Of a DNA stretch of 64,000 bases, positions 36,200 through 39,551 are shown one piece after another. Below the pieces are notes generated by a model. It made no database searches. It had not been told where the DNA came from and saw nothing but the letters and a program-made list of their open reading frames with translations. Source of the DNA: Octopus sinensis (Eukaryota); NCBI RefSeq assembly GCF_006345805.1, contig NC_043006.1:22072001-22136000 (forward strand), written 5' to 3'. Made by a program: the position numbers and the translations under genes. Position 1 is the stretch's first letter. Each line of letters opens with the position of its first letter.

Positions 36200-36617
36200 T
36201 ACTCCTATACTCTTTTACTTGTTTCAGTCATTTGACTGCGGCCATGCTGGAGCACCGCCTTTAGTCAATCAAATCAACCCCAGGACTTATTCTTTGTAAG
36301 CCTAGTACTTATTCTATCGGTCACTTTTACCGAACCGCTAAGTTACGGGGACGTAAACACACCAGCATCGGTTGTCAAGCGGTGTTGGTCGGACAAACAC
36401 AGACACACAAACATACACACACATATACATACACATATATATATAACATATATACGACGGGCTTCTTTCAGTTTCTGTCTACCAAATCCACTCACAAGGC
36501 TTTGGTCGGCTTGAGGCTATAGTAGAAGACACTTGCCCAAGATGCCACGCAGTGGGACTGAACCCGGGACCATGTGGTTGGTAAGCAGGCTACTTACCAC
36601 ACAGCCACTCCTGCGCC
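36200..36617 (-). mobile_element. SINE family B copy S1 (left boundary of the duplication)
   Basis: Family motifs; diagnostic tgcggcc and ttagtcaatc. Confidence 0.9.
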
Positions 36618-37079
36618 ACAAAATATTTTAACAATTCTTTAATACAATTCCTAATACTATTTAATTATAAAAACGTAATATGTTTTTTCAGACATCGAAT
36701 GACAAGGAGGGTCCATCAAAGGGAGCCATAGGTAAAAAAAGAAAATGGTCGAGAAATGCTTGTTTGACCCATGTTAACATGAAAAAAAAAAGAAGAAAAA
36801 TAAAATGAACAAAAGCCAAAAACTATAGATGAAGATGTGAGTCTTAATGCATTATATTACTGACCTGGAATAATCTAGTTATGAAATATTAATTAAATGA
36901 GTTGATACCAATAATTTAGTTAACTAAAAAAATAATTAATAATATACCACCAGACAAATCAATCTGCCTGTCTTATGTCAGCCAGTAAAACAATTTATAT
37001 TAAATGCGCAATACATTAAAATGGTTTCTTTAAAGAAAATCCAACATTATTTGGAATGAAAAATTTTGGTTTTACTGAC

Positions 37080-37196
37080 CGGAGAACTGATACAGCACGA
37101 TGGTGGTACACCACAAGATTCTTCTCCACTAGCATCGCATTTGAAATAAGCATTGACTTCATAATCATGGAAAGAGTCAAAGCCACAACATTCCCA
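37080..37196 (-). CDS. TSPAN15: TSPAN15-like exon 5, copy B (WECCGFDSFHDYEVNAYFKCDASGEESCGVPPSCCISSP)
   Basis: tttttttcag acceptor, CCG|GTCAGT donor, 117 nt; CCG and PxSCC motifs. Confidence 0.95.
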
Positions 37197-37371
37197 CTGA
37201 AAAAAAAGATTACAAAAATATTTTATTTGTATTTTTTTTTTTATAATTTTTGCTAGATTTCTTTCAAAGTAATTGTTAATAGAGCAATAGACACAACCAC
37301 ATCAAAATATTCCATAAATTTGAAGGAATAAAAACTTGATCTCATTTTTTGGAAATATATTTTAAACTTAC

Positions 37372-37470
37372 CGAGCTCTGAAGCCTATCCAAAGTTGATT
37401 GCATCCGTTTATTTGAATGATACTCTGCAAGGGATGGTCTTAATTCTTCAGAATTCAGTGTCAACTCAGT
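37372..37470 (-). CDS. TSPAN15: TSPAN15-like exon 4, copy B (TELTLNSEELRPSLAEYHSNKRMQSTLDRLQSS)
   Basis: cttttag acceptor, TCG|GTAAGT donor, 99 nt phase 0; Y...D..Q pattern before CCG. Confidence 0.9.
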
Positions 37471-37656
37471 CTAAAAGTAAATTTTAATGGTATTAAAAAT
37501 CATTTCAAAAGCCAGAACGCTCTATACAAATATTCTTTTTTACTTATTGTAAAATTCATGTATAATACACAGGTTTTTTTTTACCAAAACCAAGATTAGG
37601 ATACATACAATGTATGGTATTTGGCAGCAATTTTTTCCTCTCTGCTTTTATTTCAG

Positions 37657-38088
37657 AAAAATGCAATACTCTTACTCTTTACTCTTTTACTTGTTTCAGT
37701 CATTTGACTGCGACCATGCTGGAGCACGCCTTTAGTCAATCAAATCAACCCCAGGACTTATTCTTTGTAAGCCTAGTACTTATTCTATCGGTCACTTTTA
37801 CCGAACCGCTAAGTTACGGGGACGTAAACACACCAGCATCGGTTGTCAAGCGGTGTTGGTCGGACAAACACAGACACACAAACATACACACACATATACA
37901 TACACATATATATATAACATATATACGACGGGCTTCTTTCAGTTTCTGTTTACCAAATCCACTCACAAGGCTTTGGTCGGCTTGAGGCTATAGTAGAAGA
38001 CACTTGCCCATGATGCCACGCAGTGGGACTGAAACCGGGACCATGTGGTTGGTAAGCAGGCTACTTACCACACAGCCACTCCTGCGCC
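37657..38088 (-). mobile_element. SINE family B copy S2, chimera of S3 and S1
   Basis: S3-type tgcgacc left of 37714 and S1-type ttagtcaatc right of 37736. Confidence 0.88.
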
Positions 38089-38550
38089 ACAAAATATTTT
38101 AACAATTTTTTAATACAATTCCTAATACTATTTAATTATAAAAACGTAATATGTTTTTTCAGACATCGAATGACAAGGAGGGTCCATCAAAGGGAGCCAT
38201 AGGTAAAAAAAGAAAATGGTCGAGAAATGCTTGTTTGACCCATGTTAACATGAAAAAAAAAAGAAGAAAAAAAAAATGAACAAAAGCCAAAAACTATAGA
38301 TGAAGATGTGAGTCTTAATGCATTATATTACTGACCTGGAATAATCTAGTTATGAAATATTAATTAAATGAGTTGATACCAATAATTTAGTTAACTAAAA
38401 AAATAATTAATAATATACCACCAGACAAATCAATCTGCCTGTCTTATGTCAGCCAGTAAAACAATTTATATTAAATGCGCAATACATTAAAATGGTTTCT
38501 TTAAAGAAAATCCAACATTATTTGGAATGAAAAATTTTGGTTTTACTGAC

Positions 38551-38667
38551 CGGAGAACTGATACAGCACGATGGTGGTACACCACAAGATTCTTCTCCAC
38601 TAGCATCGCATTTGAAATAAGCATTGACTTCATAATCATGGAAAGAGTCAAAGCCACAACATTCCCA
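38551..38667 (-). CDS. TSPAN15: TSPAN15-like exon 5, copy A (identical to copy B)
   Basis: Same sequence and splice sites, offset 1471. Confidence 0.9.
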
Positions 38668-38842
38668 CTGAAAAAAAAGATTACAAAAATATTTTATTTG
38701 TATTTTTTTTTTTATAATTTTTGCTAGATTTCTTTCAAAGTAATTGTTAATAGAGCAATAGACACAACCACATCAAAATATTCCATAAATTTGAAGGAAT
38801 AAAAACTTGATCTCATTTTTTGGAAATATATTTTAAACTTAC

Positions 38843-38941
38843 CGAGCTCTGAAGCCTATCCAAAGTTGATTGCATCCGTTTATTTGAATGATACTCTGCA
38901 AGGGATGGTCTTAATTCTTCAGAATTCAGTGTCAACTCAGT
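38843..38941 (-). CDS. TSPAN15: TSPAN15-like exon 4, copy A (identical to copy B)
   Basis: Same sequence and splice sites, offset 1471. Confidence 0.9.
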
Positions 38942-39127
38942 CTAAAAGTAAATTTTAATGGTATTAAAAATCATTTCAAAAGCCAGAACGCTCTATACAA
39001 ATATTCTTTTTTACTTATTGTAAAATTCATGTATAATACACAGGTTTTTTTTTACCAAAACCAAGATTAGGATACATACAATGTATGGTATTTGGCAGCA
39101 ATTTTTTTCCTCTCTGCTTTTATTTCA

Positions 39128-39551
39128 GAAAAATGCAATACTCTTACTCTTTACTCTTTTACTTGTTTCAGTCATTTGACTGCGACCATGCTGGAGCACT
39201 GCCTTTAGTTGAGCAACTCGACCCCGGAACTTATTCTTTTGTAAGCCCAGTACTTATTCTATCGGTATCTTTTGCCGAACCGCTAAGTAACGGAGACATA
39301 AACACACCAGCATCGGTTGTCAAGCAATGCTAGGGGCCAAACACAGACACACAAACATACACGCACACACATATATATAAATATATATACGACGGGCTTC
39401 TTTCAGTTTCTGTCTACCAAATCCACTCACAGGGCTTTGGTCGGCCCGAGGCTATAGTAGAAGACACTTGCCCAAGGTGCCATGCAGTGGGACTGAACCC
39501 AGAACCACGTGGTTGGTAAACAAGCTACTTACCACACAGCCAGTCCTGCGC
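39128..39551 (-). mobile_element. SINE family B copy S3 (right boundary of the duplication)
   Basis: Diagnostic tgcgacc and ttagttgagc. Confidence 0.9.

What the first reader, a model, noticed from the sequence alone, without database searches (positions are those of the whole stretch)
36257..39199. In-frame tandem duplication of the two large-extracellular-loop exons of a TspanC8 tetraspanin
Exons 4 (99 nt) and 5 (117 nt) occur twice with identical sequence and intact splice sites, all phase 0. Including both pairs adds 72 aa and 6 cysteines, giving a loop with two CCG/PxSCC modules and 14 instead of 8 cysteines. This is the loop through which TspanC8 proteins are known to bind ADAM10. I know of no tetraspanin with a doubled loop. 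Skipping either pair restores the normal protein, so the allele could be tolerated and act as raw material for mutually exclusive exons. A false duplication from haplotype mis-assembly is a real alternative.
Basis: partly seen in the sequence, partly recalled or inferred. Interest (0 to 1): 0.8.

Follow-up and report, generated by a model that had tools for sequence, protein, structure and literature searches.

The report
SINE-mediated exon duplication in octopus tetraspanin-15
A 1.47-kb piece of an octopus tetraspanin-15 gene carrying two exons sits twice in tandem, most likely through recombination between two flanking SINE-like repeats; this is a young, ordinary kind of mutation, and its predicted doubled-loop protein appears in no protein record that I could search.

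Summary
On the minus strand, exon 4 (99 nt) and exon 5 (117 nt) of an 8-exon TspanC8 gene occur twice. The gene's product is 100% identical to tetraspanin-15 of Octopus sinensis and O. vulgaris. The exon copies are identical, have AG/GT splice sites and are in phase 0. They lie in a head-to-tail duplication: 36256-37727 and 37728-39199.

The new result is how it arose. Three copies of one SINE-like repeat bracket the two units, and the middle copy is a hybrid. It matches the right-hand copy at 14 of 14 diagnostic sites, then the left-hand copy at 69 of 69, with one in-register switch. That is the signature of repeat-mediated unequal recombination (Alu-Alu type). It is not the signature of a gap-edge or haplotig false duplication: the window has no N, and the units differ at 6 sites clustered near the junction.

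Argonauta DNA and the annotated proteins of O. sinensis, O. bimaculoides and Argonauta are single-loop. The predicted 372-aa doubled protein is in no searched database. Its expression and folding are untested.

Doubled-loop TspanC8 gene models exist elsewhere (a scorpion, a fish). The scorpion one is a gap-adjacent artefact.

Verdict: probably real, young (about 0.5 My or less), a known kind of event, modest interest.

The parts
36256..37727 (.). Duplication unit 1 (1472 nt): the 3' part of SINE-like copy A, exon 5, exon 4, unique intron sequence, and the 5' part of the hybrid copy B
   Evidence: Self-BLAST and pairwise alignment
37728..39199 (.). Duplication unit 2 (1472 nt): it differs from unit 1 by 5 substitutions (37950, 38011, 38034, 38108, 38272) and one extra T near 39102
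36197..36616 (-). SINE-like repeat copy A (420 nt). Orientation is inferred from pol III A/B-box-like motifs at the high-coordinate end
   Evidence: ARAGORN and Rfam gave no tRNA call, so the SINE class and the orientation are inferences
37670..38087 (-). Hybrid SINE-like copy B at the junction. Positions 37670-37713 carry copy C states; from 37727 on it carries copy A states. A 1-nt deletion sits at the switch, and there are 3 private substitutions
   Evidence: Diagnostic sites: 14/14 B=C to the left and 69/69 B=A to the right of the switch. The private changes were polarised with 5 further copies
39142..39551 (-). SINE-like repeat copy C (410 nt), 88% identical to copy A
38843..38941 (-). 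Exon 4' (upstream copy in the transcript), 99 nt, phase 0
   Evidence: Exact match to exon 4; tag|...|gtaagt
38551..38667 (-). Exon 5' (upstream copy), 117 nt, with CCG and PPSCC motifs and 6 Cys
37372..37470 (-). Exon 4 (downstream copy), 99 nt
37080..37196 (-). Exon 5 (downstream copy), 117 nt
37471..38550 (-). New 1080-nt intron between exon 5' and exon 4, created by the duplication; it contains hybrid copy B
   Evidence: Derived from the exon coordinates
61624..61809 (-). Exon 2 (186 nt; TM1 end, small loop, TM2)
41562..41636 (-). Exon 3 (75 nt; TM3)
33866..33913 (-). Exon 6 (48 nt; GDFPRYSCGYNVRRNL, the 7th loop cysteine)
32810..32926 (-). Exon 7 (117 nt; the 8th loop cysteine and the start of TM4)
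25499..25603 (-). Exon 8 (105 nt including the stop codon)

Best explanation
This is a real, evolutionarily young intragenic tandem duplication in the tetraspanin-15 (TspanC8) gene of an octopus of the O. vulgaris/O. sinensis complex.

The ancestral intron layout was SINE A, exon 5, exon 4, SINE C (read on the + strand). A and C are two old insertions of the same repeat family, in the same orientation and 88% alike. An unequal exchange or template switch between C on one chromatid and A on the other took place inside a 14-nt block of identity, in register. It produced A, unit, hybrid B, unit, C. That much is shown by the sequence.

The rest is inferred. All local splice signals are copied: at least 257 nt upstream of exon 4 and 823 nt downstream of exon 5. 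Every exon is in phase 0. The default outcome is therefore an mRNA with exons 3-4-5-4-5-6 and a 372-aa protein whose large extracellular loop carries helix A/B plus the CCG...PPSCC region twice (14 Cys). Cys7, Cys8 and helix E exist only once, so one module cannot make the full native disulfide set. The doubled protein is more likely impaired or neutral than a gain of function. Transcripts that use only one pair give the normal 300-aa protein.
For: - The repeat is head to tail, with no extra sequence and no N.
- The middle repeat is a clean hybrid: 14/14 diagnostic sites equal C, then 69/69 equal A, with one switch between 37713 and 37727.
- A and C are 88% alike, and other family members in the window are 75-91% alike. 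B is therefore not an independent insertion.
- The units are not identical. They differ by 5 substitutions and 2 single-base indels. The three differences that can be polarised are all derived in B.
- Divergence is 5/1471 = 0.34%. That is below the 1.22% heterozygosity reported for O. vulgaris (PMC10700109); two haplotypes would be expected to differ at about 18 sites.
- The ancestral state is single copy. Argonauta hians DNA has one exon 4 and one exon 5. The proteins of O. sinensis, O. bimaculoides and Argonauta have 300 aa.
- A true assembly artefact of the same gene family looks different. In Centruroides, a 1991-bp copy is 100.000% identical, not strictly tandem, and ends at an N.
- No other duplication above 99% identity and longer than 1 kb is present in the window.
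- Both candidate source assemblies are long-read assemblies (PMC10700109). In the O. vulgaris paper, ONT reads retained for the mitogenome averaged 12,112 bp, so nuclear reads of that kind would be expected to span a 3-kb structure; that expectation is my inference.
Against: - No reads, read depth or second individual could be examined.
- DNA of the O. sinensis, O. vulgaris and O. bimaculoides loci could not be fetched because the gene range exceeds 100 kb.
- The source assembly of the window is unknown.
- No annotated or assembled protein contains the exon 5 to exon 4 junction.
- The RefSeq O. sinensis model is single-loop, and the O. vulgaris model avoids exons 3-5 altogether. Either fact could mean that the doubled transcript is absent, or that the duplication is absent from real DNA.
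- The differences between the units include two homopolymer-type indels and a cluster of substitutions. These could be consensus or haplotype-switch noise.
- The AlphaFold model of the doubled protein was uninformative (pLDDT 42).
Confidence: 0.7

Rival explanations
1. Assembly artefact. The genome has one unit, and the assembler or polisher produced a false tandem copy, for example from two haplotypes or from mis-overlapped noisy long reads that looped through the two similar SINE-like copies.
For: - False duplications are common in heterozygous, repeat-rich genomes. O. vulgaris has 1.22% heterozygosity and 66-69% repeats.
- The region is bounded by repeats.
- Two of the differences between the units are single-base homopolymer-type indels.
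- Every annotated orthologue is single-loop, and the doubled protein is absent from the databases.
- A doubled-loop TspanC8 model in Centruroides is demonstrably a gap-edge artefact.
Against: - There is no gap or contig end: the window has no N.
- The junction is in register inside a 14-nt identity block of two repeats that are only 88% alike, with a single clean switch. Haplotig or contig-end duplications have arbitrary junctions.
- A 420-nt repeat at 88% identity is too short and too diverged to drive a false long-read overlap. This is my inference.
- The units differ at fewer sites (6) than two haplotypes would be expected to (about 18), yet they are not identical.
Confidence: 0.22
2. The duplication is real but phenotypically silent. 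Splicing uses only one exon 4 and one exon 5 (any of 4'-5', 4-5 or 4'-5), so the animal makes only the normal 300-aa protein.
For: - The RefSeq O. sinensis protein XP_036362235.1 has 300 aa, and the window encodes exactly that sequence.
- No database protein has the exon 5 to exon 4 junction.
- Tetraspanin genes readily produce exon-skipped isoforms. Examples are human Tspan15 delta2-3, a delta3-5 isoform in the same table (PMC6773723), and the O. vulgaris exon 2 to exon 6 model.
Against: - All four exons have identical splice sites and at least 250 nt of identical flanking intron.
- The new intron is 1080 nt long, so there is no steric hindrance.
- Including both pairs does not shift the frame, so nonsense-mediated decay would not remove the doubled mRNA.
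- From general knowledge: in human in-frame tandem exon duplications, the duplicated exons are normally included.
- It is not known whether the annotated models come from an assembly that carries the duplication.
Confidence: 0.3
3. An established, functional pair of alternative (mutually exclusive) exon cassettes that diversify the ADAM10-binding loop.
For: The exon pairs are tandem, of the same length and in the same phase, which is the geometry from which mutually exclusive exons arise.
Against: - The exon copies are identical, so choosing one or the other changes nothing.
- The whole unit, introns included, is 99.6% identical, so the event is very recent.
- Relatives have a single copy.
- No feature enforces exclusivity: the intron is 1080 nt long and the frame is kept.
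Confidence: 0.02

Closest known systems
Alu-Alu (repeat-mediated) intragenic tandem duplications of exons in human genes, for example those catalogued in breast-cancer predisposition genes, ABCA4 and MSH2 (PMC6752314, PMC11173210, PMC3770653)
   Same: - Two same-orientation SINE copies in introns flank the duplicated exons.
- The junction is a hybrid SINE with an in-register switch inside a short identity tract.
- The duplication is head to tail, kilobase-scale and in frame.
   Different: - The repeat here is an octopus SINE-like family of about 420 nt with an internal microsatellite, not Alu.
- The host is a cephalopod.
- No phenotype or transcript is known.
- The substitutions cluster within 545 nt of the junction. 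That fits error-prone replicative repair but is unproven.
Tandem exon duplication as the source of mutually exclusive exons (general knowledge: Kondrashov and Koonin 2001; Letunic, Copley and Bork 2002)
   Same: Tandem copies of exons with the same length and phase within one gene.
   Different: - Here two exons were duplicated as a block.
- The copies are still identical.
- Nothing enforces exclusive use.
Human TSPAN15 and the Tspan15-ADAM10 complex (PDB 8ESV, 7RD5; TspanC8 family: PMC3483123, PMC4751363)
   Same: - Both genes have 8 exons (PMC6773723).
- The proteins align from the TM1 region to TM4 at E = 4e-37, with CCG, CGVPxxCC, CGY and GC cysteines all aligned.
   Different: - The octopus locus carries the helix A/B plus CCG-to-PxxCC part twice.
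- ADAM10 binding by the octopus protein is untested.
Doubled-loop TspanC8 gene models in public proteomes: XP_023213225.1 tetraspanin-17-like (Centruroides sculpturatus) and KAG7271637.1 (Coryphaenoides rupestris)
   Same: Both are predicted TspanC8 proteins in which the CCG...CC...CGY region occurs twice with identical sequence.
   Different: - The Centruroides duplication is 100.000% identical over 1991 bp, is separated by 1388 bp of other sequence, and ends at an N in a 16-kb draft contig. That is an assembly artefact signature.
- The octopus one is strictly tandem and free of gaps, has a hybrid repeat at the junction, and its units differ at 6 sites.
- The fish locus was not examined.

Membership tests
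TspanC8 tetraspanins | Tetraspanin domain | tested here: met
   Pfam PF00335, E = 8e-37 (127.5 bits against a cut-off of 32.1), for the single-loop product of exons 2-8
TspanC8 tetraspanins | Eight cysteines in the large extracellular loop, including CCG and PxxCC | tested here: met
   Exon 5 has CC, C, C and CC (6 Cys), exon 6 has CGY (1) and exon 7 has GC (1). All align with the cysteines of human Tspan15
TspanC8 tetraspanins | Closer to TspanC8 members than to other tetraspanins | tested here: met
   PDB search: Tspan15 at 4e-37, against Tspan7 at 6.5e-19, CD53 at 7e-12, and CD9 and CD81 at about 1e-5. The Tspan10 loop scores 6e-17. NCBI names the identical O. sinensis protein tetraspanin-15
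TspanC8 tetraspanins | Binds ADAM10/Kuzbanian through the extracellular loop and promotes its exit from the ER | not testable with these tools
   This is known for the mammalian and fly members (PMC3483123, PMC4751363). There are no data for the octopus protein
Repeat-mediated (Alu-Alu type) tandem duplication | Same-family, same-orientation repeats flank the ancestral segment | tested here: met
   Copies A (36197-36616) and C (39142-39551) are 88% identical and both lie on the same strand
Repeat-mediated (Alu-Alu type) tandem duplication | A hybrid repeat at the junction with a single in-register switch | tested here: met
   14/14 sites B=C, then 69/69 sites B=A, with the switch between 37713 and 37727
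Repeat-mediated (Alu-Alu type) tandem duplication | Single-copy state in relatives | tested here: met
   Argonauta hians locus L001 has one exon 4 and one exon 5. The 300-aa proteins of O. sinensis, O. bimaculoides and Argonauta are single-loop. DNA of the closest species could not be fetched
Repeat-mediated (Alu-Alu type) tandem duplication | Junction confirmed in independent reads or individuals | not testable with these tools
   The junction ORF and nine other ORFs are absent from the protein collection. No octopus DNA was found in the metagenome contigs
False duplication (assembly artefact) | A copy abuts a gap or contig end, or the junction is arbitrary | tested here: not met
   The window has 0 N and the junction is in register. 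Compare the Centruroides control, where the copy ends at an N
False duplication (assembly artefact) | Copies differ at the level of haplotype divergence, or are identical | tested here: inconclusive
   0.34% substitutions against a genome-wide heterozygosity of 1.22% for O. vulgaris. This is lower than expected for two haplotypes, but local heterozygosity varies and the source species is uncertain
False duplication (assembly artefact) | Halved read depth, or spanning reads with one copy | not testable with these tools
   No reads were available
Mutually exclusive exon cluster | The copies have diverged, so that the alternative products differ | tested here: not met
   The exon copies are identical
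Mutually exclusive exon cluster | A mechanism that forbids joint inclusion (a too-short intron, a frame shift leading to NMD, or competing RNA pairing) | tested here: not met
   The intron between 5' and 4 is 1080 nt long and joint inclusion keeps the frame. Competing RNA structures were not examined

The most novel reading that the evidence does not exclude
The duplication is real and common or fixed in one species of the O. vulgaris complex. It is spliced in full, and the 372-aa protein folds with two CCG/PxxCC modules, leaves the ER and still engages ADAM10, perhaps with altered stoichiometry or substrate choice. That would be the first natural tetraspanin shown to work with a doubled variable loop, caught at the very start of a possible path to alternative loop cassettes.
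Probability: 0.1. Interest if true: 0.6.

Novelty: new member of a known kind. Interest (0 to 1): 0.3.

Why it matters
If confirmed by reads, this is a clean cephalopod example of SINE-driven exon shuffling caught within roughly the last half-million years. Octopus genomes are more than 11% SINE (PMC13282606), so such events may be a frequent source of structural variation in their genes.

The affected segment is the part of a TspanC8 protein that contacts ADAM10. A carrier animal would therefore be a natural experiment on how much insertion this disulfide-locked loop tolerates.

There is also a practical lesson for annotation. Identical tandem exons make junction reads multi-map, which may explain odd gene models such as the O. 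vulgaris exon 2 to exon 6 product.

If it is an artefact, it is a useful flag on the assembly.

Tried and rejected
1. A protein search with the doubled 144-aa segment found only distant cephalopod fragments. It even missed the identical O. sinensis protein, so it says little about absence.
3. An exact look-up of the 372-aa doubled protein, and of the ORF that spans the hybrid junction plus nine neighbouring ORFs, found none of them in the collection.
4. I tried to identify the source assembly through the neighbouring MRPL20-like gene. The search found nothing, so the window could be O. sinensis, O. vulgaris or a close relative.
5. A scan of metagenome contigs for exon 5 gave no match.
6. AlphaFold2 of the doubled protein with a 7-sequence alignment gave pLDDT 42 and pTM 0.22, which is uninformative. 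No fold search was attempted.
7. ARAGORN and Rfam did not recognise a tRNA-like head in the repeat. Calling it a SINE rests on its size, copy number, dispersion and A/B-box-like motifs.
8. Mutually exclusive exons were rejected as a present function, because the copies are identical.
9. Identity of the exons was rejected as evidence of selection. With 5 substitutions in 1471 nt, the chance that none falls in the 216 exonic nt is about 0.45.
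Full report
**What is in the sequence.** The window has no N. Between 36.2 and 39.6 kb it contains a head-to-tail repeat with a period of 1471-1472 nt.

The units differ by five substitutions (unit-1/unit-2 coordinates 36479/37950, 36540/38011, 36563/38034, 36637/38108, 36801/38272) and by one T in a poly-T run (37631/39102). There is also a 1-nt deletion exactly at the junction.

Reading the minus strand shows two coding exons in each unit:
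- Exon 4 is 99 nt, at 37372-37470 and 38843-38941. It encodes TELTLNSEELRPSLAEYHSNKRMQSTLDRLQSS.
- Exon 5 is 117 nt, at 37080-37196 and 38551-38667. It encodes WECCGFDSFHDYEVNAYFKCDASGEESCGVPPSCCISSP.

The copies are identical base for base. Each has an AG acceptor behind a pyrimidine tract and a GT donor, and each starts and ends in phase 0. None of the differences between the units lies in an exon.

**The gene.** A tblastn search with cephalopod tetraspanin fragments, followed by inspection of splice sites, gives the rest of the gene on the minus strand:

| Exon | Coordinates |
|---|---|
| 2 | 61624-61809 |
| 3 | 41562-41636 |
| 6 | 33866-33913 |
| 7 | 32810-32926 |
| 8 | 25499-25603 (with the stop codon) |

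All of these are in phase 0. Exon 1 is not in the window.

- The single-loop product of exons 2-8 matches Pfam tetraspanin at E = 8e-37.
- Its best solved relative is human Tspan15 in the ADAM10 complex 8ESV, at E = 4e-37. The alignment runs from the TM1 region to TM4 and includes all eight loop cysteines. Non-C8 tetraspanins score far lower.
- It is 100% identical over all 248 residues to XP_036362235.1, tetraspanin-15 of Octopus sinensis (300 aa). It is also 100% identical to the parts present in the O. vulgaris model CAI9728327.1.

The gene is therefore the octopus Tspan15-like TspanC8. The window comes from O. sinensis, O. vulgaris or a very close relative; I could not tell which (one search failed).

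Human TSPAN15 also has eight exons (PMC6773723). The large extracellular loop is the region through which TspanC8 proteins bind ADAM10 (PMC4751363, PMC3483123).

**How the duplication arose.** The two units are bracketed and separated by three copies of one interspersed repeat of about 420 nt: A (36197-36616), B (37670-38087) and C (39142-39551). The window holds about eleven copies of this family, 75-91% identical to A. SINEs make up 11.6% of the O. vulgaris genome (PMC13282606).

A and C are 88% alike, so they are old, independent insertions. B is a hybrid:
- At the 14 sites left of position 37713 where A and C differ, B always carries the C state.
- At the 69 such sites from 37727 onwards, B always carries the A state.
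- There is one switch, and it lies in register inside a 14-nt block where A and C are identical.

This is the classical footprint of an unequal exchange or template switch between two dispersed repeats. It turns A-unit-C into A-unit-B(C/A)-unit-C, and it is the same kind of event as Alu-Alu-mediated exon duplications in human genes. The short identity tract and the 1-nt deletion at the switch fit a microhomology or replicative mechanism better than classical homologous recombination. That last point is an inference.

**Real or artefact.** I could not look at reads, so the question remains open. The internal evidence favours a real event:
- No gap or contig end is nearby.
- The junction is in register rather than arbitrary.
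- The two units are neither identical nor as different as two haplotypes should be. They differ at 5-6 sites, where about 18 would be expected at the 1.22% heterozygosity reported for O. vulgaris.
- The three differences that can be polarised with other family members are all private to B.
- No other near-identical kilobase duplication occurs in the 64 kb.
- Both candidate assemblies are long-read assemblies. Reads of the length reported for O. vulgaris would be expected to cover the whole structure; that is my inference.

A control came from the protein search. The scorpion model XP_023213225.1 also has a doubled TspanC8 loop, but its locus shows a 1991-bp copy at 100.000% identity. That copy is separated from the original by 1388 bp and ends exactly at an N. 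This is what a false duplication looks like, and the octopus locus does not look like that.

I put the chance that the duplication exists in the sequenced animal at about 0.7-0.8.

**Age and distribution.** Argonauta hians has one exon 4 and one exon 5 (L001). The annotated proteins of O. sinensis, O. bimaculoides and Argonauta are all 300 aa, and cuttlefish transcripts are single-loop (P0014). The doubled state is therefore derived.

The repeat-age scale of PMC13282606 (JC 0.065 = 18 My, 0.09 = 25 My, 0.2 = 56 My) amounts to about 3.6e-9 per site per year. On that scale, five substitutions in 1471 nt give about 0.5 My (Poisson range 0.15-1.1). This is younger than the 2.5-My split of O. vulgaris and O. 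sinensis. The allele should then be species-specific or still polymorphic.

The real age may be lower still, because the differences are not spread evenly. All five substitutions lie within 545 nt of the junction (a range of 322 nt; P about 0.01 for uniform placement), and the remaining 830 nt are identical. Error-prone repair synthesis next to a template switch would produce this pattern. So would a local haplotype switch in the consensus. I leave this unexplained.

**Predicted consequence (inferred, not shown).** The duplication copies at least 257 nt of intron upstream of exon 4 and 823 nt downstream of exon 5. The new intron between exon 5' and exon 4 is 1080 nt long. Nothing in the sequence distinguishes the two pairs, so the default expectation is that all four exons are included.

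The mRNA stays in frame. The protein grows from 300 to 372 aa, and the loop from 8 to 14 cysteines. The repeated piece is helix A/B plus the CCG-to-PxxCC region. Cys7 (exon 6), Cys8 and helix E (exon 7) remain single.

In CD81 the first cysteine of CCG pairs with the last loop cysteine before helix E (general knowledge of the CD81 loop structure). By analogy, one of the two modules would lack native partners. I therefore expect misfolding, ER retention or at best neutrality, rather than a new function.

Any transcript that uses only one exon 4 and one exon 5 encodes the normal protein, so the allele can be tolerated.

No database record shows the doubled form:
- The 372-aa sequence is absent from a 15-billion-protein collection.
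- The searches found no partial protein with the exon 5 to exon 4 junction.

The O. vulgaris model joins exon 2 to exon 6 and is the longest product on record for that gene. It could be a real delta3-5 isoform of the kind known for human tetraspanins. It could also be a symptom of multi-mapping at duplicated exons.

**Comparison and novelty.** In mechanism, this is a new example of a well-known kind of event: repeat-mediated intragenic tandem duplication of exons.

As for the product, a doubled tetraspanin loop is unusual but not unheard of among gene models. Four of the best 150 relatives of the duplicated segment, in a library of 1.84 billion representative proteins, matched it at more than one stretch:
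- Two have a doubled loop, in a scorpion and a fish. The scorpion one is an artefact; the fish locus was not examined.
- The other two (P0025 and P0069) each contain two or three complete tetraspanin units in one predicted protein, not a doubled loop.

Literature searches turned up no tetraspanin with a duplicated loop or with mutually exclusive loop exons.

The reading as mutually exclusive exons is a possible future for the locus, not a present property.

**Verdict.** The most likely explanation is a young, real, SINE-mediated duplication whose expression is unknown. Interest is modest (0.3). It would rise to about 0.6 if a carrier animal were shown to make a doubled-loop protein that folds and binds ADAM10.

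Noticed in passing
window 37727-38272 (and 37631/39102): All differences between the two duplication units cluster next to the junction. There is a 1-nt deletion at the switch, substitutions at +223, +284, +307, +381 and +545 nt, and a poly-T length change at -96. The other ~830 nt are identical (range test P about 0.01). This could be error-prone repair synthesis, a haplotype switch in the consensus, or polishing noise.
   Followed up: partly
window 48103-49553 (also 12484-12826 and 58678-59045): A 184-nt unit of a second interspersed, SINE-like family forms a tandem array of 7.9 copies at 96% identity in an intron of the same gene. Two-copy arrays of the same unit occur elsewhere in the window.
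   Followed up: no
window ~889-966 and ~6767-6830, + strand: Two coding exons of a mitochondrial ribosomal protein L20-like gene (..RLNAACQEHGIGYSQLLQGLAR and ..VSLNRKVLADIAIYEPRTFK). This neighbour gene is convergent with the tetraspanin gene. Its first exons lie outside the window. A protein search with these exons found nothing.
   Followed up: partly
O. vulgaris protein CAI9728327.1 (P0015), corresponding to window exons 2, 6, 7 and 8: The only, and longest, annotated O. vulgaris product of this gene joins exon 2 directly to exon 6. It therefore lacks TM3 and most of the large loop (203 aa). It is either a real delta3-5 isoform or an annotation casualty of the duplicated exons.
   Followed up: partly
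L002 (Centruroides sculpturatus AXZI02028350.1) 3285-5275 and 6664-8654: The scorpion protein XP_023213225.1, tetraspanin-17-like, has a doubled large loop because a 1991-bp segment is present twice at 100% identity. The second copy ends at an assembly gap (N at 8655), so this is a probable false duplication in a RefSeq model.
   Followed up: yes
window 36391-36457, 37862-37928 and 39335-39397 (inside the SINE-like copies): The repeat family carries an internal (CA)n/(TA)n microsatellite whose length differs greatly between copies. This is the main source of length variation in the family.
   Followed up: no
window 31253-31846 (+) and 41935-42291 (-): There are transposon-derived ORFs in the introns. 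One is a reverse-transcriptase C-terminal fragment of 197 aa. The other is a 118-aa ORF with C2H2-like zinc-finger motifs. Neither is in the protein collection.
   Followed up: no
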